From Setoptus koraiensis (Eukaryota; Animalia; Arthropoda): a DNA stretch of 64,000 bases. A model generated the notes under the pieces. It was not told the origin of the DNA and did no database searches. It saw only the letters and a program-made list of their open reading frames with translations. The DNA lies in contig CM106585.1 of NCBI GenBank assembly GCA_048013815.1, positions 1,550,001 to 1,614,000 on the forward strand, in the 5' to 3' direction. Every line of letters begins with the position of its first letter. Position 1 is the first letter of the stretch. The position numbers and the translations under genes were made by a program. Positions 34,757 through 59,841 of the stretch are shown here, piece by piece.

Positions 34757-37700
34757 ATGGAATATCTTCAAAATACGAAAAATATCAGGAACATATTGAT
34801 ACTTGCTCATGTGGATCATGGAAAAACCACCATAGCCGACTCACTAATTGCTAGTAATGGTATTATTTCCAAGAGAATGGCTGGAAAAGCCAGATATATG
34901 GACGATAGGACAGATGAGCAAGAACGTGGTATTACAATGAAAAGTAGTAGTATAGCCTTAAAGCATTCCATCGACGATCAAAGATATTTGATCAATTTAA
35001 TAGATTCTCCAGGCCACGTTGATTTCTGTGGCGAGGTATCGGCAGCTGTACGTCTCTGTGACGGGGCTCTCATAGTGATCGATGTCGTCGAGGGAGTTTG
35101 CCCACAAACCAAGACCGCCCTGGAACAAGCCTGGAACGAGGGTATCGAGCCGATTCTTGTTTTCAACAAGATCGACAGGTTGATCATAGAGCAAAAGTTG
35201 GATGAAACTGCCGCCCATCTCAGGCTCAATCAATTATTAGAACAAGTCAATGCAATTGTAGCAACTTTACTGACAACTCAACTGTTTACAGATCAGGAAG
35301 AACAAGAATCCAAAGTAGAGCCAACCGTTGAAACAACATCAAAGCTCACAGTATCAGATAGCCATGTCTATGATTGGGCTAGTGCCATCGAGGACATCGA
35401 CGACGATAAGTATTATTTCATGCCAGAAAAAGGAAATGTCGTTTTTGCCAGTGCTATCGATGACTGGGCTTTCACTATAAGTACATTTGTCGAAATTATA
35501 AATTCAAAGCTCAATATAAACAAGAACGCTCTTCAAAAGACATTATTTGGCGATTATTACATTGATGCCAAGCAAAAGAGAATCGTCAAGAATGCGCAAG
35601 CTAAACTTCGTAAAACTTTGTTTGTTTCCCTTATACTCAGATATATCTGGAAAATTTACGGCAGTGTCATGGCTCAGACCAACACCGTTTTCCTCGGCGA
35701 AGACAAGGAAAGTCTTGCAGATATAAGCAAAAAGTTAAATATTACCGTCAATCCAAGAGATATTAATCATAGCGACAACAGGCATAAGCTAAGACATGTG
35801 ATGAGCAACTGGCTACCTTTATCTAGGCATGTCTTGGATTGTGTAGTTAAATTGGTGCCAAACCCACAGCAGCTAAGTGAGAAACGTGTTGAAAGATTAT
35901 TGAGTTCTAATTTTAAGAAATTTCACCAATTATCAAGTGAGACACAATCGTTGAAGAAGGATTTCATGCAATGCTCATCCTCTGACGGCATTCCAAAGGT
36001 TGCTTATATATCTAAAATCTCACCTTTCGAAAAGAAGACTAAAGGAGGGACGGAATCAGAAATTATTTTGATAGCCTTCGCTCGAATATTCAGTGGCAAA
36101 CTATCTGTAGGCGATAAGCTATTTGTTCTTGGACCTAAACATGATCCTAGTAAGTTTATAGATGTGACAACTATAGATCCCAACAAGAGGCTAGAAGACC
36201 TGGACGTCGATGAGCATGTCACCGTGGCAGAGATCAAAAAATTGTACATTCTCATGGGTAGAGATATTGAAGAAATAGTACACGCTAATGCCGGTAATGT
36301 TATTGGCATTGGTGGGCTGGAATCTCACCTTTTAAGAACAGCCACAATATCAGATAGGATCTACTGTCATCCATTTAACGATCTTCATTTGCCTGCAAGT
36401 CCGATATTAAGGGTCGCCATTGAACCTCAGGATCCTAGAGAGATGCAGCATTTGATCAACGGTTTGAAGTTACTGAATCAAGCAGACCCTTGTGTAGAGG
36501 TTAAATTGCAACAAACTGGAGAGCATGTAATCATAGCCACTGGAGAGGTGCATCTGCAAAAATGTGTTGAGGATTTGGAACAACGATATGCCAAGATTGG
36601 TTTGAATGTGTCTTCTCCGATCGTGCCATTCCGTGAAACAATTGTCCTTCCACCGAAGACCGATATGGTAAATGAAACTATCGACGATACAAACCTAGAA
36701 ACAAGTGCCTTAAGAAAATTAACTCTCAAGACTCCCATAGAATTATTCACGCCCAATAGAAAATGCTGTGTTAAAATAAAAGCCTCACCATTACCTGATG
36801 AGGTCTCGAAACTACTACTCGATAGTGTTGAGTTACTGAGGTTCATCGCACGTATATTAACCTCTCACCATAGGTCTACAGTCTACGAACAGATGACTGA
36901 TATCAACATGAAGAAAGTTGACGAATTTAAGAGTAAATTAACGGAGGCCTTCAAAAACTCTGTGATCGACAATGCAGAATTGTCAAATCTATATCCAACC
37001 GATATAGTGAATCGTATTTGGTCCTTCGGTCCAAAATATTCTGGATCTAATTTGCTAGTGATAGATTCTAGTTTAGATTTGCAATTCAATATATGGAATA
37101 AACTTAAAAAAGATCCTACAAGTGGTAGTCTAGAGCTAGAGGTTGACGATCTCAAATCATATGAGGATAGTTTTGTGAGTGGCTTCCAACTGGCTACTCA
37201 ATCTGGACCCCTATGTGAGGAGCCTATGATGGGCGTTTGTTTTACTGTGCACGAATGGGCTAGTACAATGAAAGATAACTCATCGCATCACGTTAATCTA
37301 GAGCAACATGAGGACGAGGATAGTTGCGGCGATGACAACAGTTCCTCTAGATCAGAAGATCAACAGAAAATCGGGAATCACAACAGTAGAGACTACTTTG
37401 GACCAATGAGTGGACAAATCATTTCAACAGTTAAGGATTGCTGTCGCAGGGCTTTCCAGGATGAACCGCAACGTCTGATGTCACCCATGTACTCTTGTAC
37501 CATTCATGTTACTACAGAGATGCTTGGTAAAATGTATGCCGTTCTGGGTAGACGTCACGGTAGGATATTGTCTAGTGATATGAAAGAAGGTAGTCAGACG
37601 TTTGAGATTATAGCCGTACTACCTGTCATAGAGAGTTTAGATTTTGTGAATGAAATACGCAAGCAGACAAGCGGTATGGCCAATCCACAATTGTTATTCA

Positions 37701-37900
37701 GTCATTGGGAGGTGATTGATGTGGATCCATTCTGGACACCCTCCACAGAGGAGGAGTATTCGCTGTTTGGCGAGAAAGCCGATACAGAGAATCAGGCGAA
37801 AAAATATATGAACTTGGTGCGAAAAAGAAAAGGTTTAGCCCTGCAGGAGAAAATTGTCGAGCATGCCGAAAAACAGCGAACAATTAAGAAGAATAAATGA
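34757..37900 (+). CDS. EFL1: Elongation factor-like GTPase 1 (EFL1/Ria1, 60S maturation), intronless, 1047 aa
   Basis: IRNILILAHVDHGKTTIADSL, RYMDDRTDEQERGITMKSS, INLIDSPGHVDF, NKIDRLI, and the C-terminal KQTSGMANPQLLFSHWEVIDVDPFW...RKRKGL...KIVEHAEKQRT. Confidence 0.96.
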   Translation: MEYLQNTKNIRNILILAHVDHGKTTIADSLIASNGIISKRMAGKARYMDDRTDEQERGITMKSSSIALKHSIDDQRYLINLIDSPGHVDFCGEVSAAVRLCDGALIVIDVVEGVCPQTKTALEQAWNEGIEPILVFNKIDRLIIEQKLDETAAHLRLNQLLEQVNAIVATLLTTQLFTDQEEQESKVEPTVETTSKLTVSDSHVYDWASAIEDIDDDKYYFMPEKGNVVFASAIDDWAFTISTFVEIINSKLNINKNALQKTLFGDYYIDAKQKRIVKNAQAKLRKTLFVSLILRYIWKIYGSVMAQTNTVFLGEDKESLADISKKLNITVNPRDINHSDNRHKLRHVMSNWLPLSRHVLDCVVKLVPNPQQLSEKRVERLLSSNFKKFHQLSSETQSLKKDFMQCSSSDGIPKVAYISKISPFEKKTKGGTESEIILIAFARIFSGKLSVGDKLFVLGPKHDPSKFIDVTTIDPNKRLEDLDVDEHVTVAEIKKLYILMGRDIEEIVHANAGNVIGIGGLESHLLRTATISDRIYCHPFNDLHLPASPILRVAIEPQDPREMQHLINGLKLLNQADPCVEVKLQQTGEHVIIATGEVHLQKCVEDLEQRYAKIGLNVSSPIVPFRETIVLPPKTDMVNETIDDTNLETSALRKLTLKTPIELFTPNRKCCVKIKASPLPDEVSKLLLDSVELLRFIARILTSHHRSTVYEQMTDINMKKVDEFKSKLTEAFKNSVIDNAELSNLYPTDIVNRIWSFGPKYSGSNLLVIDSSLDLQFNIWNKLKKDPTSGSLELEVDDLKSYEDSFVSGFQLATQSGPLCEEPMMGVCFTVHEWASTMKDNSSHHVNLEQHEDEDSCGDDNSSSRSEDQQKIGNHNSRDYFGPMSGQIISTVKDCCRRAFQDEPQRLMSPMYSCTIHVTTEMLGKMYAVLGRRHGRILSSDMKEGSQTFEIIAVLPVIESLDFVNEIRKQTSGMANPQLLFSHWEVIDVDPFWTPSTEEEYSLFGEKADTENQAKKYMNLVRKRKGLALQEKIVEHAEKQRTIKKNK

Positions 37901-45303: not shown

Positions 45304-47887
45304 TCATAATGATGTCAAACATTGGCTATTTTCACTATTGTTGTCAGACGATCCGTCATTGTTTGGATCGCGTCTATTTGGTTGAAATTGTGGCGGTGGC
45401 GGCGGCGGGGGCAGCGGCGGCGTTGGTGGTGAGGATGGTGGCGACGAGGGTGACGATGACGCCGGCTTTTGCTGCTGCTGCTGACCACTATTAACGCCAG
45501 ATAACATTCGTTGTGCATGATGTAATTGTGATGGATGGTCTCCTTGATGTGATTGAGCTAAATGGATGGGATGATTTGTAATTAGCCGATGAGCGCCGCC
45601 ACGATTTGTCAGCTCTATCAGAGCTGTTCCATTTTTTGATCTAGACGCAGATATATCAGCATTGTTGATAGCGGTGCCCTTGCAACCGGACTCATTTCGC
45701 ATCTGGTGACCGGAAGAGCTAGCAGTGGCTAGCGGTGTGTCATCAGCGGTTGCTGTTGCTGGCTCGGCGCGTCTTCTATCAATCGTGACACTGGCCGGCT
45801 GTTGCTGTTTGTTTGTCTGCAAATCAGACACAATTGTTGCTGTTTGTGGTTGGTGTTGTTGTTGTGGAATTTGATTTCGGAATGATGCGTCACTTTGGAT
45901 TATTTTCTTTTGTTTAACTATATTGTTACTCTTATTTCTTTTATTATTTACATGTTTTGTCCACTGAGGTTTGCCAACGGCACTCTGAGCTGCCGACTTT
46001 GACTGGACCATCACTATTCTGCCATCGTGAGTGAAATCGTCGGTATCCTGATCGTCGTCTTCATCACGGTCATCACGGTCATCATCGTGGTTGTCGTCAG
46101 CGCCGTTATTATCACCTCCTCTGTTAGAGTGCGACCTATTGGCACTGTTACCGTACCTGTCCCCTCTTGAGCGTCTGTCATGTTGTTGTTCTTCTTCGTC
46201 GAGATCGTCTCCGTCTCCCTGCTCATCGTCGTCGTCGTCATCGTCGTCGTCGTCGGCATCATCCAACTGTTCGTAACCGTCTTCATCGTCGTCGTCATTA
46301 TCATAACTGTCATTATCCATTTCGTTGGCTCGTCGTTTGCTGCCACTAGCGGCTTGTCGATGTTTTGCCGCTGCTCCCATTTGTTTATTCATCATCAACG
46401 TTTGGCTATTATCGTCATCATTATTAATATTTGCCAAAACAGACACGCCACCGGATGTGCCATCAACTGTCTTCATGTCCAAACTGGCGCTTGTAATCAA
46501 TGATGAATTGTTGCTACCGCTGTTCCATCTCGATTGTTCATCTAGAACTTTGTGCTGGTGACAAGATTTCATTGCCACCGATTGATTTGGATAATGACTG
46601 TGACGGCGATGTTTTGATTGTTGTTGTTGCTGTTGTTGTTGCTGCTGCTGCTGCTGAACGGACCCCACTTGGTCAATCGAGGCCAGATGCTTTAAGTTGG
46701 CCTTGTTGTGGTGGGTCATTGTCATGGCAACTTGAGCCGACAAACAGGTGCCAAGCGTCGAGTTGGCGGCCGCCTGAAGAGCGTGCATAGCGATCGAAGT
46801 GTCAGAGCAAGTGTTTTGCTGTTGTTGTTGATGTTGTTGTTGAGCAATATTGACATGTTGAGAACAGCAATCAGCTGCCGATTGGTTTTCCGGCGTCGAT
46901 ACAGCGTCTTGATTTGGTTGCATTTCCATCATAACATTTGCATTTTTGCTTTGTTTTTTGCTGCCCTGTTGTTGCCTTGAGCTATTGTCAGTGTTGCTTC
47001 TATAGGCGCTATTTGCGGATCTATTACCGGCGACATTCTGGTGATGATGATACTGTTGTTGAGTGTCTACCAGCGATTGTTGATTATGACGAAGTTGTTG
47101 ATTACTATTGCGCAACGTTGCTCTCGGATCATTGTTGGCCGTGTGAACGAGCTGTGCCTGCTGGTGATAGAGGCCTCCCTGAGTGGTCACTGCCACTAGA
47201 TCGGCCCCACAAGAAAACGGACCGGGCCCGCTGGAGGTGGCTCGCACATTTGATGAATGTTGCTCACAAGCATTATTATTATTGTTGTTGTTGTTGTTGT
47301 TGTTGTCCGAGGAATGTTGCTGGTTCAAGCTGCGAACGCTCGCTCCATGGCCCAGACCGTAATTATCGTGTGGTCGTTGATTTGTGTGTGTCAAACTCGA
47401 ATTGGTTGTTGTATCTAGATCGTTGTTGTTTGTGGTTGTTGTGCAACTGTCAAATTCGGTCTCAATGTCATTGCCGGCCAAAGTGTTTTGATTATTCAGA
47501 TCGTCTTCATTGTCGTCGTCGTAGTCGTCATAAATGCACGAACAATGATGACAGCAACTACTACAACATTCGCTGCAATGATCCAAAGAAGAAATGGATT
47601 GACTTCCATGCATAACAGCTGATTGTTGATTGTTGTCAAGCATTTCGCCAGTGGTGTGTCCTTGATGATAGTGGCACGAAGTTGACGTTTTGCCATTGTT
47701 GTTGCCATTGGTGCCAGTGGTGCCGTTATTACAGTTGTAACGATGATGCAACGAGCAAGCGGATCCATTGAATTTGTTTTTATTTAACTGCACTTTATTA
47801 GGTTGCTGTTCCTGATCTTGCTGCTGATATCCACTTGGTGACATCTTGATTTTTGCGCGTATTATCTGAGCGTGTTGCTGCTGTTGT

Positions 47888-47919
<32 letters not shown>

Positions 47920-50900
47920 TTGCTGCTGCTGACTTCCGGTCATAATAGAACGCTGCTGAACGATGGTATAGTTTTGGTTAGTGTTGCCGGTTTGATTGGC
48001 GCATTGGAATTGGCTCTTCTGTTGTTGGTTGCGTTGCTGGTGAACTGCACCAGTGTCGGTGTCGTTGTTGTTGATATCTGTGCCACCACTAATACTTTGC
48101 TGTTGGTTACTAGAGGAAGACAATGACGATCTTGTTTTAATTGTGTGCGTATCAGAGCCATAATTGTGCTTGTGTATCATTGTCAAACAGGTTGTGTTGG
48201 TTGTTGGCGCTATTATGCTAGCGAGAGCACCGCCAACAACACCACATTCGTGCTGACCAGAGACAGACATTTGACTGTTCTGATTGTGACGCTGATGCAA
48301 ATGTTGCTGATAGGCACTCTGCTGATGCGTATGGTGATGCTGATGCAAATGGTGCGAATGATGATGCAAATTATTATGTGTTGTGCCGGCTTGTTGTTGT
48401 TTGTTGTTGGTGACATTTTGGTGATAACTGTTCATTGCCGTGGTAGTGCCACTAGTGGTTGGTGTTCCGCTGTTGTTTGCACCGTCATTGGTCACAAAAC
48501 CAATATTGGTGGCGCCACTGTTACTTCCGCTGTTGTTGCCCAATTGGGAGCCGCTCGGAGTGTGCTCTTGTACACCTTTTGCCATTTGCGAATCTATTTC
48601 GAAGCGTCCACGATTCGATCCAACCAGGTACATTCGGTTACGTGATATATCACAACATTTAGACAGTATCACAACATTTAGACAGTATCACAACATTTAG
48701 ACAGTATTACAATATTTAGAAGCAAACGGTCAGTCACATGAACAGTTTCAATGTAACAACAAGTATCTGTCTTGGCTGCGACAACTCACCTTGATTTATT
48801 ATGGCCGAAGTGGTGCTCATGGCGCCTCCGCTGCCGTCTGGCTGGGTGTTTGTTTGGCCGCAATTGCTTGCGTGTGAAGACACTGTCTTGTAGGGTCGCT
48901 TATATGTGTTGCTGTTCATGGTCAATTTTCGGACATTTTTATCCGGATTAAAGAGAATGATGTGCACCTTGGGCGCAAACAAACAAAACAGGGTGACGTA
49001 AGCGGACAAAGATATCGAGACGCACATTGTCATGGATTGAATCTGTTGCGCCAAGAAAGAATTGGGCAGAGACAGAGAGAAACAGCTTATTAGACAGGTG
49101 AGCAGAGAGGCCAAATTGGGCGAGGCCAATAATTGGGCATGACAAATACCTCTGAGGAGCTCATTGTTCCGTAATATAGTGGCACAAAGGCAAGCCAAAT
49201 GACACAAGTGGTGTACATGGTGAAACCGATAAACTTTGACTCGTTGAAATTTTCCGGTATTTTGCGCGTCTTAATGGCATAATAAGTTGATAATGTAATG
49301 AGTAACATGTTGTAAGCCAGACTCAATATGAAATTTTTTCCTGATGCTTTGCATCGCAAAATAACCTGTGCCTTGTGGTATTCGAACAGTATGCCCGGTT
49401 CCTCGATGAGAAGCCACAGGCCGGTCAATAGTACCTAAAATAACGTAGTACAATTATAAAAGTGTAAGTATATGAGTGAATAAATTGCATAATATTTGAG
49501 CTATGATAATAATATGTTTGCATGACCGTTATCAGTGTACAGCACTGATCGACCACCTCTGCCAGCAACAACCAGTGTCCACCAGAAAAGAATCCAACTA
49601 CAACTAAGTATCTGGACGAATATTTTCACTGCACTAAACTGTACTCACACATCTCAATTCTATCCAATTCAATTTGATTCAAGTACATTAGTGTCAGTGT
49701 TTGCGAAAAAGAATGATTGATTAGTGGCGGCCCTATTAATGGGGCCCGCCGCTGTCCGTCACAACATTGTGCATGATTGATAAGTTCATTTGTTAATGTG
49801 ACTGTTGCACCATGGCCATCAACTCACTGCTCTCTGGTGACCATTATAATATATCGAAATGAGAGATTAGATTAAATCAGTCACTACAACACAGCAACGA
49901 CATTAGTAAATGGGCCACCAGAGTCATGTGGTCATCATCATGATGGTTTGTCTCAATCGCAGTCGCAATTTAGTACCAAGTGATTAGCATATGTCATTTG
50001 CTTCTAACCCGATTACCACGACACAATATTGAAGACATGTTAATACGATTACTCGTGGACTTTGGGACTTATGGTCGCATTGATTGGTCAAAGATCAGCC
50101 TCGGTTCTGGTGACGAAAATGCAACAAACACACAAATTCACTCGAATCATGAATTAATAGAACATGGAATATTGATATTTTCATCACTCAGTTCAATGTC
50201 AAAACTATGTTATCCGGCTACAATCATCATCTTTCAAGACCTGCCCTGTTCTGTTTAGGCAAATATGCATCATACATGATGTGATTGGAATAGAATAATC
50301 AGGCAAAAACTACTGAACTACACACTTGGCCTTTGCTCCATTTGCCACTCATAGAGGTTGCTATTTTCACCTGGGACATTGCCTAAGGAATATTCTATAG
50401 AATGTCTATGTCATCGAAAGCTGGCTCATTATCAGTTGCCCACTTCCGGTCTTATTTGTGTCGCTCGAATGGTCGATTGACCTTGATTGACATCAGCCCG
50501 TGCAAGGTACCTACCTGGAAGCCTACCAAAACGGCAGTGATGACGAACTGTGATCTGGGCGAAGTAAATCTGACCTTTTGAGCGGATCTGGTTGCGCTCA
50601 TAAATATACGCGCTATCCTGTTTGTTTTAACCAAAAGCGAGCCATACATTAGCGAGAAACCAAAATTAACCTACGCCCACGCACATTGAATTGCATATGT
50701 TGATTTGATTAGATTAGTAGGTTTGTTTAATGTCATCATCATGATGCAGGGGCGGCATGAGATGATTTGCATAAAATAAAAAGATATGTATGTTGGTGTG
50801 ACTGGCAAATGACGTAACGACTCAAGTCTCAGGTTCAGTGCCTGCTGAATAGCCTCATGTGTACTTACCATAAAACGCTGACAGCCACACACTAAACCGG

Positions 50901-53528
50901 AAGGTTTAGCCAATAATATAAACGTGCACACATGACAGCAGCCCATACCGGCCAACAAAATAAATGACAACTCAATTCCGCTGGCCTTCACAAGTGGCGT
51001 ATCTCTAAAACGGAAGAAGGTATAAGTAACAAAAGTGGTCAACATCAGGCCCACGCTGGCCACCACTGTTGGCACAATGGCGTGTATTGAGGGCCATCTA
51101 ATATATTCCTCTGGCAATTTGCGGCACTTCATTTTGGAATCCTCGGGCCACCAGCCCGCCTTGCAAGCCTCGCAACTTGTTTCGTTTGCTTTAATCTCAT
51201 TTTCGGCACAAGCGCGACACATCCAGCAGCATATATCACCGGCGGTTATTTTCACTTCAAACATTTGGCATGGCTTTGAGCAAAACGATTCAGGTGGACC
51301 GCCTAGAATGCATTCGCCAAATTCTAGCTCGTCCAATTCTAAATTGTACTCCTTCTCGGACCATTTACCCGCCAGACTGTACTCGTAACTGACACCCACT
51401 CCGGCAAATGCGGGCGCCGCCGGATAACCACCGGGCACGGGCAATATGGGTATTCCGCCCGCGTGGTGCCGGTGCCCGCCGGCTGCCATTGAGCTGTCGT
51501 CTGGAGGGGGCAGACCCTCCTCTAATTGATCTAAACGGATACGGCCGTCCTCTTGTTGATTGTGGTGCTGCTGAAGTTGGGGCGCTAGTGCCTCGTTGTT
51601 GTGAACGATTTTATTTTGGGACGACTGTTGCTGTTGTTGCAACCATGGTTTTAACAAGTGTAAATTGCTGTTTTCTTGGACGGAATCTGCGTTGAGTGAC
51701 GCTCTCATTGACGGACTAATGCCTGCCGGGCCGGAATTTGTGTTTGTAAAATTAACTAAATCCTCATAACCGGCCTGTTGTCCGTTATATTCACCTGTTG
51801 AGCTGTCTGATTGGTCAATCATCATGGGCGGGCTAGTTTGTTCGCTTGGTTGTTGTGATGCCTGTTGATTGGCTTGATAAATAAAAAATGGTTGCTCTGA
51901 GCCATATTTGTTGTTGTTGTTGTTGCTGTTGCTATTGTTGAGCTGACTATTTACATTGAATTGTTCGCTGTTCGACGGCTCCTCGTTATTTGCTGCCGAC
52001 TTAATTCCATTGCTGGCCATGTTACTACTAGCACCAGTTGGTTCGCCTGCCGGAAGTTGAGTTCTACCAGCAATTACACCACTTCCGGCATAGATATTAC
52101 CCTGGCCACTTGCGCCAATTGCAGGCTCAAATTGACCACTGCTACTCTGTGGACCGCAAGTATCCATCGATTGAAAGCTGGCACCATTCGCGTACGATCG
52201 ACGATAGTTGTATATGTTGTATCTGCCCATTCCGTCGCCACGTTCATCGAACTTGACCTCACTTCCGGCCAAATCTGTTTTATCGATGCAGCAAAGAGAA
52301 TTGAATTAGAATGAGCATGTCGAATAAATAAATAATTAATTTTAATTCAGCACAATAATCACGGGCGCAGTTGCCGATAATGAGAGTAAATGAGAATAAA
52401 TCGGCCAATCATCTGTGATTTAATCGCAAGGTTTATTTTAGTTTAATTGAACACCATTTGGCCGCTTTCTGGCTCTTCAGTGGGCCCACGGGCCTCAGGC
52501 AAATTGTCGAATCCATGAGGACCAATTGAATACGCGTACCGTACGGGTACGTGACACGAATAAACTATTGTGTTATTCATGGACGATATAATTTGTTCGT
52601 GCCCAGATAATTCGACCGGAATATTATATATGTAAATAGATCCCGGTCACCTATGACTCATAGGCTATGACTATTACGAACCGGTGAAAGAATCGATCTT
52701 TTTGCATTATCATATATTATATATCTCATAATAGACTGCCAGCCCCATGCTTCACTAACTCAATCACGTCAGAGTGGAATAACAAACTGATCGTTGTTAC
52801 CTGATGGCAAACAAAGGCTGAATGAATGAATACAGTTGCAATACTATGCAATAGAAATAATCGGAATGTTTCAATTGACAGTTGTGAGTGACCGTAAGAT
52901 GCTCGATCTATCAATAGTTACAAACAGTTTACGATTCTAATGCAACACGACACTTTTAGCTGTCAATAAATACAAGGAAAAGCTACTATGGTCGTTTATC
53001 TGTCATCGTTCTGTCCATTTAGCCAATTGGACATAATCAGCTGCGTGTCTCGACATTAACACTGCAATGTAGCCTCGTTTCTGATGTGTGTTCCAAAACA
53101 GAAAAGAGGCCCGAGCTAAACATATTGCAAAAACGATTATGCAGTTGAATGGAACTGAGGGACTCAAAAGAATTTACATTATTTGACTATGCCCGCCTAA
53201 CTGGTTAATGACACTCTTTTTCTTATCATTAGTCAGCGCAATCGGATGACAATTCTCGAACAAAATAATACTATTCTTAGTGCACAAATTTGGGCCGATG
53301 TTCGGGCCAATGGCTTGTTCGGAGAAAAAAAGCTCGTATCTAGACTTGACAGGATGTTGGTGAGCCTCTCATTAGAGCAAGAAGCCACCAAGATGATACA
53401 TGCAGTTATTATTGTCGTTGCTGCTTGTTGGCGGCGGATCATTTGTGAGTCACAGATTGTGAGTGATCATTAGGGACACATCGAGTGGGATCAAAAAGAG
53501 GCCCAACAGCGACCGAACAGCAACTTGA

Positions 53529-56500: not shown

Positions 56501-59500
56501 ATCGTTCGTTAGTTATTCTCATTGTGTTGCGCAATAGTGACGGTAGGTTAACGGAGTATCAATTGACCGGAATTGGGGTTATTAGTTATGGTCGATTGTG
56601 ATTGACACACAAAAGAAGATCGATTTTTTCTTTGTATAGCAAACAAAAACAGCAATTCAGGGATAGTTTCCCATCTTCGAACCTTCTCGCTTGTCATTTG
56701 GTCGGCAGAAAATGTGCAACATTCGTCAAGTTTCGACCTTCTTAGTGACATATACTATTAGGTCGTTTAATGTTCGAGAAACTCAATTTCTCTGGTTACA
56801 GGTCCATGGTGCAAGAATATTTTCCTTCTTAGAGATGCAAATTACACTGGTACAAAGTTGAAAATTTCAACAATTCCAGTCACACTTCGAAAAAAGTGCT
56901 TACGCGGAAAACCTTATTCACACGAGATCCGAACAAACTGAAGCCTAAATCTTCTCTCCTGTTCGAGCAACGAAAAAGAAAGTCTATCGTAACTTCAACA
57001 AAGGCCTAGTTACTGGAGCAATCGCGATTTTATGAAAATTTTTCATAAATCTATGCGCGCCATATACCGTATAAGTTATACGTCATTTATCACTGGCACG
57101 TTTTTGCAAGAAATTTTCAACTTCTCAATTAGTGCGCTTGCTACCATTAAAAATAGGGGCGATATGCGCCGCAAGAATTTTTCAAATATCCAGGGAATGG
57201 CGAAAAAGTTGAAAAAAAGAATTTCTATACCGACGGTTTCACGATTTATCGGATCAGAGTCGCTGTTTTTTTTTGGTCTGAGTTTTCAGCAAATGAGATT
57301 CCCCTCGTTAGTTCTTTCTCAGTCTCTGATGGCGTTCGTCGGATGTCAGCTTATTGTTTGTGCCAATTAGGGTGACATGCCACATAAAAATGATAATGAT
57401 TATACAATAAGAATATTGTCTAAAAGGCCAACCGATTGATGACTTACCCAAAAAGGACACGTTAAGTAGATACTTGGTGTAAAAGTCGCCCCCTATAATG
57501 ATAATTGACGCCAGCAGAGCCATTATTATTGACAGTGTCGTTGCGAGACAAATGTTTGTTTGTGCGAGGAGGGCAAGATAAATAAAAGACAAATAGTGGT
57601 TATATAGATAGATAGTATATATTAGATGATGCTAATAAAATGAGAGTCTGTGAGTAGTATCAGCTCAATGCAATTTGTCGTTGATTAATGGTATTGCACG
57701 AATCATCGAACGTGCATGAATGCATCATTGAGACGAGCCCCGTTTTCTAGCCACTGTAGCGTGTGCTGCGCATAGTGGCGAGAAAAGAAAAGTTGGGGCC
57801 GTTTTTGGGGCCGTTACTTGGTAGGGGGATATTTACCGCTCAACTCCTTAAGTGCCTCGCAAACCACTCCGGGCCTTGCGTCGCATAAATCCGACCAGGC
57901 GTGATGAAGAGCGTGAGCCATGGCGTATACGGCATCAACAACAAATTGCACTTTCTGCTCTTGACGATAACCATTTGATTCTGAGATATGCAAATTAGGC
58001 GAACAAATCTCACTTATTGTTTGCTGTTGCTGTGGTTGCTGTTGGCCATTGCCGTTGGCATTGTAGCCACCGTTGCTTTGAATGAATGAATGGACGCCAT
58101 GTTGATTTGTTGTTGTTGTTGTTGGCTGATAAAAAGAAGTGAAATCATTATCTCTCTTTCTTCTATTTCTGGCTGTTGTTGCTGGCACTGTTTTGGCTCG
58201 CTCTTTAAAATCTTCTCCTTGTGCCATTGGCTTGCCAGCAATGCCACTTTTAGACTTTTTATCATCATTGCTGTTCCTTTGTTCTTTAGCTTGCCCACTG
58301 TCTAACGGACTCTTATCTGGCGTCTTGGTGGTGCTGGTTGTTGTTGGCGTTGTTGTAGTTGTTGTAGTTGTTGTAGCTGTTGTAGTTGTTGTTGCCGCTG
58401 TTGTTGTTGTGGTTGCCAGCGTGTCCGTTACTAAAGTCGTATACATTTTGTTGGCCTTTTGACGCAAGGAGGCGCCAGCGTTTATTTTATTTGAGCTCAT
58501 TGTTTCGTTGCTGTTAGAATGGGTGCCATTTGCAAATTGATCCAACAAACCGCTCCCATTCAAGGCTTGGCCGGCCCCAGTCTGGCCACTGTTAATTATT
58601 AGCTTATTGTTGTCTAGTTGATTGTGCAAACTATGCCCGCTGCTGTTGTCCATATTGGCATGTTTGTTTTCAATTTGTTGTTGTTGTTTTTCTGCATCTA
58701 TTGAATGCGTGATCACCGTGATACTATTTTTGCCCTCTTTGTCGTCTTTGTGTCGCAAAATAGTCACCTTACTGCTAATGGACCCCATCGATTGTTGATT
58801 ATCTGTGATGTGTAAAAGAGGTGATTTGTTCGCTAGTAGTTTGTTGTTGCTGTTTTGTGTTGCTAGCAATGAGCGCGCCGAACGACCCGCGGGTTCGTCC
58901 GTCATTTCCGGTTGCATTTGGGTTGCCCCATCATTGTTGGGCGTTTGGTCGGTGTCCAATAAAAGACTGTCCAACAGTGGTTGTGTTGTTTGTTGCTGAA
59001 GATCCGATTCTATATCTAAACTATTATCACTTAGGCGGCTAACTCTGACATTTGGCTCTATCAGATAATTTGTTTGGCGTCGTCTATTGGTGTTGCTGTT
59101 GCTGTTGTCGTTGCTGCTTGAGTCAGCTATATACGTTTGCATACTGTTCATTGTGCCCTGATGCAAATGTTGCCGATATTGGTGCTGATGTTGATGCTGT
59201 TGCTGCTGTTGTTGTTGCTGTTGGTCGTCTTCATCTTGGTCCTCTAAATGCAAATAACAATTAAACCATTCTTGCCAATATTCCTCGAACCAGGGATTAC
59301 GTTTATTGTTGTATGGGGTGAGATTTTTCATATAATCATCAAACTCAGGTATGTGCTTATTGGACAGCTCCACTGTTATGGCTCCCCAAGCGGCCTCCTC
59401 AACGCCCTCAACCAATTTTCTGTGAGTGCCCCAACCGTCGGCCGCTACCCAAAAGAAATGATTTGTCTTTTTGGCCTTTTTCACAGCGGCCAATAAATGT

Positions 59501-59841
59501 TGCGTATCCTCGGCACGGGTAAACAAAACAATACCCCTGGCCCGTTTTTTTAACAATTCTCTCACTATGGCATCAAAAACAAATTCGTCAGCTGTGGGCG
59601 GAACTTTCTCATGGGCAGCTATACAAATACTCCTATTGGCCGCTTGTTTCATAAATTCCTTACTGCCAGAATCTCCATACAAGCCCTCGCTACTGACCAG
59701 CGACACATAGGTCCATTTGAGGCTCCGCTGGACAATGTCGGCAATGGCGCGCGCTTGGAATGTGTCAGATGGAACGGTACGCGCGAACAAATCGTATAGT
59801 GTCTTGTCGCTTAATGAGGTGGCAGTGGAGGCATAACTCAC
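45304..59841 (-). CDS. mGluR: Metabotropic glutamate receptor (class C GPCR, Drosophila mGluRA-like), 5'-partial, 2479 aa in window
   Basis: Exons 59841-57837, 57492-57448, 52274-50869, 50670-50515, 49434-49150, 49042-48790, 48593-45304 have consistent phases (7440 nt). VFT motifs: VSYASTATSLSDK..FARTVPSD, WVAADGWG, NPWFEEYW, FVVDAVYAMAHALH, FDERGDGMGRY. Cys-rich domain: ESFCSKPC..CCWMCRAC. 7TM: [73 protein letters not shown]. The N-terminal exons were not found in the window. Confidence 0.93.
48648..48720. repeat. 19-bp tandem repeat (about 3.8 copies) in the last mGluR intron
   Basis: TATCACAACATTTAGACAG x3 followed by TATTACAATATTTAGA. Confidence 0.95.
55737..55793. repeat. Degenerate 12-bp tandem repeat (GACCGAGAAAGG-like, about 5 copies)
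   Basis: GACCGAGAATA GACCGAGAAAGG GACCGAGAAAGA GACCGAGAAAGG GACCGAGAATT, in an mGluR intron. Confidence 0.85.

What the first reader, a model, noticed from the sequence alone, without database searches (positions are those of the whole stretch)
57990..59260. mGluR Venus-flytrap domain carries a ~415-aa in-frame insert with a mucin-like Thr tract and a furin-type site
Seen: between NPWFEEYWQEWFNCYL and ICSPNLH...EQKVQFVVDAVYAMAHALH, the single exon encodes ~415 extra residues. These include Q/H runs, a TTTTTAATTTTTATTTTTTTTTPTTTST tract (~58310-58430), RNRRKR|D (58153-58170) and RSAR. Known: in mGluRs these two motifs are separated by only a few tens of residues, and R-x-[K/R]-R is the furin/proprotein-convertase consensus. 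Inference: this receptor may carry a large O-glycosylated extracellular loop that is cleaved in the secretory pathway, giving a two-chain or 'uncaging' class C GPCR. I do not know of such an arrangement for mGluRs.
Basis: partly seen in the sequence, partly recalled or inferred. Interest (0 to 1): 0.72.

Follow-up and report, generated by a model that had tools for sequence, protein, structure and literature searches.

The report
Mite glutamate receptor with cleavable insert
In a probable gall-mite genome, the glutamate-binding domain of a metabotropic glutamate receptor carries a 417-residue disordered insert with two furin-type cutting sites that are conserved across 28 related sequences, so the receptor is probably cut into two disulfide-linked chains, which is not described for this receptor class.

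Summary
One minus-strand exon (about 57837-59841) encodes the middle of an mGluR Venus-flytrap domain. It has 417 extra residues (58006-59256) between two invariant cysteines. In 75 of 94 loops from the nearest mGluRs those cysteines lie 5-44 residues apart.

The insert is an open frame: 0 stops, against 14-29 in the other five frames. Independent DNA runs carry the same sequence. There is no plausible internal intron. No RNA data exist.

The same loop is expanded (77-214 aa) in 28 unnamed relatives. In a tree built with the window and 17 of them, these form one clade (100/99) among acariform mites, probably Eriophyoidea. Their inserts are almost unalignable: median 30% identity, against 86% in the flanks. 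Two basic sites nevertheless persist.
- Site A is [R/K]-x-R-R|S (window R-S-A-R|S-L).
- Site B is R-x-[K/R]-R|[S/A] (window R-N-R-R-K-R|D).
- The P1 arginine is invariant in the 18 aligned sequences and is encoded by varied codons.
- Shuffled controls give no such conserved columns (0 of 60).

A second 270-aa insert in the same receptor has no basic site. The genome encodes furin-family convertases.

Best reading: convertases excise a Ser/Thr/Pro-rich connecting piece and leave a disulfide-linked two-chain flytrap. Cleavage, glycosylation and expression are untested. The scan's notes held no earlier record of this feature.

The parts
57837..59841 (-). Exon encoding the middle of the mGluR Venus-flytrap domain, including the insert. 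Acceptor tcaatcag|GTGAGT at 59841; donor AGCG|GTAAAT after 57837.
59257..59841 (-). Flytrap part before the insert (aa 1-195), ending in Cys1 (59257-59259). By coordinates Cys1 equals mGluR1 Cys378 and CaSR Cys358. It holds the equivalents of ligand residues T188, D208, Y236 and D318.
58006..59256 (-). The insert: 417 aa rich in T, Q, S, N and D, with no Cys. Predicted without secondary structure after aa 230.
59179..59223 (-). Gln/His run at the start of the insert. It takes the place of the conserved QLQANLLQQQxLASG segment of the relatives.
59071..59088 (-). NRRRQT, a dibasic/tribasic motif ('site 0'). It aligns with the RR motif of the relatives (R in 13 and 15 of 18 sequences).
58873..58884 (-). 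Site A: R-S-A-R|S-L, the minimal furin motif. It aligns with [R/K]-x-R-R|S of the relatives; the P1 Arg is present in 18 of 18.
58327..58413 (-). Mucin-like Thr tract (29 aa: 24 Thr, 1 Ser, 3 Ala, 1 Pro; mixed ACN codons), lying between sites A and B.
58153..58170 (-). Site B: R-N-R-R-K-R|D, a multibasic furin-type site. It aligns with R-x-[K/R]-R|[S/A] of the relatives; P1 Arg 18 of 18, P4 Arg 17 of 18.
57837..58005 (-). Flytrap part after the insert, starting with Cys2 (58003-58005; CSPNL...QEQKVQFVVDAVYAMAHALH). It holds the K409 equivalent.
57448..57492 (-). Next small exon (GDFYTKYLLNVSF), with acceptor ...tatag and donor GTAAGT.
50848..52275 (-). Exon with the end of the flytrap, a second 270-aa low-complexity insert (51388-52197), the cysteine-rich domain and the first membrane helices.
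48851..50670 (-). Three further exons of the seven-helix domain: 50512-50670, 49147-49434 and 48851-49063.

Best explanation
The insert is a real, translated, lineage-specific expansion of a surface loop of the flytrap domain. The two cysteines that close this loop align with those that are disulfide-bonded to each other in CaSR, and from memory also in mGluR1. The gene is the only close group II/III-like mGluR in the genome. The insert is intrinsically disordered and evolves very fast, apart from a short conserved start and two furin-type sites. Most likely, convertases of the furin family cut both sites in the late secretory pathway. That would remove the variable Ser/Thr/Pro-rich middle piece, which is probably O-glycosylated. 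The receptor would be left as two chains held together by the Cys-Cys bridge and by the fold itself. This resembles the insulin receptor insert domain or the TSH receptor C-peptide. Shown here: the insert, its open frame, its restriction to one clade, conservation of the sites at the protein level, and the presence of the enzymes. Inferred: translation in vivo, cleavage, glycosylation, and any effect on function.
For: The frame is open, with 0 stops against 14-29 in the other frames, and the only donor-like motif lies 8 nt before Cys2. Independent DNA runs carry the same sequence. All 28 relatives keep an open insert of 77-214 aa at the same site, and no relative with 64% identity or more gave an ORF shorter than 345 aa. 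The tree of flanking parts, built with the window and 17 of the relatives, places them as one clade at 100/99, with the window as sister to the other 17. Flanks are 86% identical (median), inserts 30%. The P1 Arg of sites A and B is invariant in 18 of 18, and the P4 Arg of site B is present in 17 of 18. None of 60 shuffle-and-realign controls gave any column with 17 of 18 identical residues. R-x-[K/R]-R is enriched over shuffles in most inserts. Arg codons differ among species, using both CGN and AGR. By motif scan, 27 of 28 relatives have a basic site within 35 aa of Cys2 and 25 of 28 have an earlier [R/K]-x-x-R (P0002 and P0012 have RRR|S instead). As an internal control, the second 270-aa insert of the same protein has no [R/K]-x-x-R at all, and two of three relatives examined also lack one. 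Convertase genes with S8 pro-domain, Peptidase_S8 and P-domain are present. Cys1 maps by coordinates to CaSR Cys358, and CaSR Cys358-Cys395 is a disulfide (PMC9581290). AF2 predicts no structure for aa 230-606.
Against: There is no RNA evidence in any species. No cleavage has been observed. In the window, site A is only the minimal R-x-x-R, and site B lies 52 aa before Cys2 instead of 15-28. A few relatives have non-canonical versions: RITR, RLVR, RPTR, and RRLVSR in P0325. The relatives are kin, so counts of sequences overstate independence. The disulfide is inferred from homology. The AF2 model is poor (mean pLDDT 47).
Confidence: 0.55

Rival explanations
1. The insert is translated but is a neutral low-complexity loop expansion that is never cut. 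The basic motifs are kept for another reason, for example binding of an anionic partner or matrix component, or folding and export of the loop.
For: The same protein has another 270-aa low-complexity insert, and possibly a 1100-aa tail of the same composition. Insert length varies from 77 to 417 aa. The window's site A is degenerate.
Against: The conserved pattern is the furin consensus itself: P1 Arg, P4 Arg, basic P2 and a small P1' residue. It occurs at two places in a disordered luminal loop. The other insert keeps no basic motif.
Confidence: 0.28
2. All or part of the insert is removed from the mRNA as an unrecognised intron, so the mature receptor has a normal short loop.
For: No RNA data exist. 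Exon-like open frames can persist by chance in repeats.
Against: There are 0 stops in 417 codons against 14-29 in the other frames, and no internal donor-like motif. Twenty-nine sequences keep the frame open. Motifs are conserved at the amino-acid level with differing codons. No truncated ORFs were found among close relatives.
Confidence: 0.07
3. The locus is a decaying pseudogene or an assembly artefact built from microsatellite-like repeats.
For: Repeats at 58106-58124, 58337-58410 and 59091-59237 break short-read contigs.
Against: The flanks keep every invariant flytrap residue. The rest of the gene is intact. It is the only close copy in the genome. Independent runs agree on the sequence.
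Confidence: 0.03

Closest known systems
Group II/III metabotropic glutamate receptors (mGluR2/3, arthropod mGluR)
   Same: The domain set is the same: ANF_receptor flytrap, NCD3G cysteine-rich domain and 7tm_3. There is 55-64% identity to chelicerate mGluRs in the flanks, ligand-contact residues are conserved, and both loop cysteines are present.
   Different: The Cys-Cys loop is 417 aa instead of 5-24 and carries two furin-type sites. A second loop is expanded by 270 aa.
Insulin receptor insert domain
   Same: It is a disordered insert within a folded extracellular domain. It holds an R-K-R-R furin site, is heavily glycosylated (with O-glycans) next to the cut, and the two chains stay together (PMC7039211).
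   Different: The fold and receptor class are unrelated, and it has one site instead of two. In the mite receptor nothing has been shown experimentally.
TSH receptor C-peptide
   Same: It is a GPCR ectodomain with a lineage-specific insert of about 50 aa. The insert is cut at two sites and excised, leaving disulfide-linked A and B subunits (PMC5401882).
   Different: It is a class A receptor, the insert is in the hinge region, and the protease is not of the furin type. The function is debated even there.
CaSR and T1R 'loop 3' of lobe 1
   Same: The loop position is the same or equivalent. The CaSR Cys358-Cys395 loop is already longer, at 36 aa (PMC9581290). T1r2a loop 3 lies at the top of lobe 1 beside the partner subunit's loop 2 (PMC5457512).
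   Different: These loops are tens of residues long and no processing is described. Equivalence to T1r loop 3 was not tested by alignment here.

Membership tests
Class C GPCR / metabotropic glutamate receptor | Venus-flytrap (ANF_receptor) domain | tested here: met
   PF01094 E 1.3e-41; mGluR3 structures E 1e-68
Class C GPCR / metabotropic glutamate receptor | Cysteine-rich domain followed by a 7tm_3 domain in the same gene | tested here: met
   NCD3G and 7tm_3 in exon 50671-52272; further helices at 48851-50670. Exons were searched one by one and were not joined.
Class C GPCR / metabotropic glutamate receptor | Amino-acid contact residues (mGluR1 T188, D208, Y236, D318, K409 equivalents; roles from my own knowledge) | tested here: met
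   Exon T6, D26, Y55, D135 and K630 are invariant or nearly so
Furin / proprotein convertase substrate | R-x-[K/R]-R or minimal R-x-x-R motif | tested here: met
   RNRRKR|D and RSAR|S in the window; conserved in relatives
Furin / proprotein convertase substrate | Site exposed in the lumen of the secretory pathway, in an accessible segment | tested here: inconclusive
   The flytrap is extracellular by homology. AF2 gives no structure and low pLDDT for the insert, but the model is poor.
Furin / proprotein convertase substrate | Convertase present in the organism | tested here: met
   Five P-domain loci; S8 pro-domain + Peptidase_S8 + P-domain in L013
Furin / proprotein convertase substrate | Observed cleavage after the P1 Arg | not testable with these tools
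   Needs protein work
Mucin-like O-glycosylated segment | Ser/Thr/Pro-rich tract | tested here: met
   Thr tract at 58327-58413. The segment between the sites is 20-57% S+T+P in the relatives, but the long tract is specific to the window.
Mucin-like O-glycosylated segment | Actual O-glycans; GalNAc-transferases in the genome | not tested
   No search was made

The most novel reading that the evidence does not exclude
The insert acts as a pro-segment. While intact, it holds the flytrap or its dimer top in an inactive or non-binding state during transit through the glutamate-containing secretory pathway. Excision at the two convertase sites then switches the receptor on. This would be a zymogen-like class C GPCR.
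Probability: 0.12. Interest if true: 0.8.

Novelty: new variant of a known kind. Interest (0 to 1): 0.55.

Why it matters
Class C receptors are thought to work as uncut chains. A natural flytrap that tolerates, and probably requires, a break in its backbone at one loop would show where the fold can be opened, tagged or fitted with sensors. It would also add proteolytic maturation to the ways these receptors can be regulated. The carriers are probably eriophyoid mites, which include crop pests. A receptor form limited to that group is of interest for their neurobiology.

Tried and rejected
- RNA evidence: the run search found only DNA runs, and their contigs cover the introns too.
- Transcript-derived proteins of relatives: I looked for proteins joining the neighbouring exons and found none. 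All clade members are single-exon ORFs from genomic contigs.
- AF2 on the exon with 18 sequences gave a poor model (pLDDT 47). It was used only to note the absence of predicted structure in the insert. I made no fold search on it.
- ESM Atlas search of the insert gave no usable hit.
- A paper search for furin-cut mGluR flytraps found nothing relevant. Searches for the mGluR1 Cys378-Cys394 bond found no held paper. That bond is therefore cited from memory and backed only by the CaSR statement.
- The big representative search returned only one member of the clade (P0006). Several very long top hits, of which P0043 was inspected, appear to be tandem-fused vertebrate V2R-like gene models and not relatives with inserts. 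One apparent 473-aa loop (P0065) is a mis-pairing in such a fusion.
- Joints inside the insert have 20-24 nt sides and come from (GTT)n-like repeats elsewhere, not from splicing.
- I did not build a joined spliced protein. Exons were searched by reference one at a time.

Full report
**What is there.** The minus-strand ORF 57814..59841 encodes 675 residues. Pfam sees only the ligand-binding region family ANF_receptor. Against solved structures, residues 1-198 match mGluR3 chain positions 145-340 and residues 607-670 match 343-404 (E 1e-68). The stretch between has no counterpart. The edges look like splice sites: tcaatcag|GTGAGT at 59841 and AGCG|GTAAAT after 57837. The insert is bounded by two cysteines, aa 195 (59257-59259) and aa 613 (58003-58005), and is 417 residues long (58006-59256).

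**Is it real and coding?** The reading frame has no stop in 417 codons, while the other five frames have 14 to 29. The only donor-like GTRAGW motif lies 8 nt before Cys2. The Thr tract uses four different Thr codons, and the Gln run mixes CAA and CAG. Contigs of three DNA runs (two or three studies, two of them probably one data set) cover the exon with 0-3 differences and no frameshift. They break only at short repeats. No RNA run holds the region, so expression is not shown.

**The gene.** Taking exons one by one: the small next exon (GDFYTKYLLNVSF) is at about 57448-57492. A large exon at 50848-52275 holds the end of the flytrap, the NCD3G domain and the first 7tm_3 helices. Three more exons finish the seven-helix domain. 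The upstream flytrap exon lies outside the window, at G000:C1:1616530-1616880, about 2.5 kb past the window's end. The genome has only one close gene of this type; the next paralogue is 37% identical.

**How unusual is the loop?** I located the two cysteines with small profiles in all mGluR relatives returned by the word search and by the exhaustive representative search. Of 94 loops, 69 are 5-24 residues, six are 25-44, and one of 473 is a mis-pairing in a fused model. Only the window and its relatives have 91 or more. Named chelicerate receptors all have short loops: Limulus, ticks, spiders, a pseudoscorpion, Tetranychus, Brevipalpus and Blomia.

**The relatives.**
- Seventeen unnamed proteins from Logan, JGI and ENA contigs (P0002-P0018) are single-exon ORFs with an insert at the same place. 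A second search added eleven more, P0317-P0327.
- Insert lengths run from 77 to 214 residues.
- Their contigs come from different studies and show the same exon layout, with the NCD3G and 7tm_3 exons downstream.
- In the length range 143-455 aa, no relative with 64% identity or more gave an ORF shorter than 345 aa. The set is therefore not biased by having missed copies with stops in the insert.
- A tree of the flanking 255 columns places the window plus 17 of the relatives as one clade (100/99). The window is sister to the rest, and the clade sits next to Tetranychus, Brevipalpus and Blomia.

**The organism.** An intronless EFL1 gene in the window is 57% identical to that of Aceria tosichella. 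It is 56-62% identical to about 35 unnamed sequences and 44-50% to other arthropods. The genome has 48.8 Mb in two contigs.

**What is conserved inside the insert?** Flanks are 86% identical (median), inserts 30% even after optimal alignment. The aligned inserts keep three things:
- A start, QLQANLLQQQxLASG, followed by an RR motif.
- Site A, [R/K]-x-R-R|S, with P1 Arg in 18 of 18 and P2 Arg in 16 of 18.
- Site B, R-x-[K/R]-R|[S/A], with P1 Arg in 18 of 18 and P4 Arg in 17 of 18. It lies 15-28 residues before Cys2 in the relatives and 52 in the window.

In 60 trials in which each insert was shuffled and the set realigned, no interior column reached 17 of 18 identical residues. The real alignment has eight such columns, three of them these arginines. 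Strict R-x-[K/R]-R motifs exceed the shuffled expectation of 0.02-0.2 per insert in nearly all members. In five species with DNA in hand, the conserved arginines use both CGN and AGR codons, so the constraint is on the protein. Across all 28 relatives, a motif scan finds a basic site within 35 residues of Cys2 in 27. An earlier [R/K]-x-x-R is present in 25; P0002 and P0012 have RRR|S there, and P0326 has only an RR. The segment between the sites is Ser/Thr/Pro-rich (20-57%) and often holds two cysteines in the relatives.

**Internal control.** The same receptor has a second insert of 270 residues in the hairpin between YNYRR and YEYSLAGKW (51388-52197). This insert is also present at 95-145 residues in three relatives. 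It has no [R/K]-x-x-R in the window, and only one of the three relatives has a basic run there. Conserved basic sites are therefore not a general property of such inserts in this lineage.

**Where the loop sits.** By the coordinates, exon T6 pairs with CaSR position 170 and mGluR1 chain position 156 (native 188). It follows that Cys1 corresponds to CaSR Cys358 and mGluR1 Cys378. CaSR Cys358-Cys395 is a disulfide (PMC9581290). From memory, mGluR1 Cys378-Cys394 and mGluR3 Cys361-Cys373 are too. In mGluR3 the two cysteines are 11 residues apart. The likely equivalent 'loop 3' of T1r2a lies on top of lobe 1, beside the partner's loop 2 (PMC5457512); I did not test that equivalence. A cut within this loop would leave the two chains bridged.

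**Mechanism.** The pattern has P1 Arg, P4 Arg, a basic P2 and a small P1' residue. It occurs twice in a disordered luminal loop and is conserved while everything around it changes. This is what proprotein convertase substrates look like. The genome has at least five P-domain loci and a complete S8 pro-domain/Peptidase_S8/P-domain gene. I therefore think it most likely (about 0.55) that the loop is cut at both sites and the middle piece is lost, giving a two-chain flytrap. The nearest working analogies are the insulin receptor insert domain (PMC7039211) and the TSH receptor C-peptide (PMC5401882). I found no report of such processing in a class C flytrap, though that search is not exhaustive. 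What the cut achieves is unknown. It could be removal of a bulky piece, or activation.

**Limits.**
- There are no transcript or protein data.
- The relatives are kin, so counts are not independent events.
- The window's site A is only the minimal motif.
- The disulfide is inferred.
- The AF2 model is weak.

**Verdict.** This is a new variant of a known receptor kind, of moderate to good interest.

Noticed in passing
window 51388-52197 (-): A second low-complexity insert of 270 aa lies in the flytrap hairpin between YNYRR and YEYSLAGKW of the same receptor. It is also present, at 95-145 aa, in three relatives (L001, L015, L016). It has no conserved basic sites.
   Followed up: partly
window 45304-48672 (-): A 1122-aa open frame rich in Q, N, H and D lies just downstream of the last seven-helix exon. 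It ends in LTSL, the same last four residues as the Blomia mGluR (P0033). It may be a giant cytoplasmic tail exon of this receptor with a PDZ-type end.
   Followed up: no
G000:C1:1616530-1616880 (about 2.5 kb beyond the window's end): The upstream flytrap exon of this gene (90% identical to that of relative L001) lies outside the window, so the gene is cut by the window's edge.
   Followed up: partly
window 34757-37900 (+): An intronless EFL1 (ribosome assembly GTPase) gene. Its nearest named relative is Aceria tosichella at 57%, which supports an eriophyoid origin of the genome.
   Followed up: yes
relatives P0002, P0003, P0004, P0006, P0008, P0011-P0014, P0016, P0018: The inserts of many relatives hold exactly two extra cysteines, lying between sites A and B in those inspected; the window has none. 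This may be a small disulfide loop in the piece that would be excised.
   Followed up: no
window 58106-58124, 58337-58410, 59091-59237: Runs of GTT/GCT-type triplets (Gln and Thr codons on the coding strand) break short-read contigs and attract reads from many other loci. Depth there rises 10- to 50-fold.
   Followed up: partly
P0001 (Rhipicephalus microplus, 958 aa): A public gene model that fuses two consecutive mGluR flytrap pieces. It scored high for that reason, not because it has an insert.
   Followed up: yes
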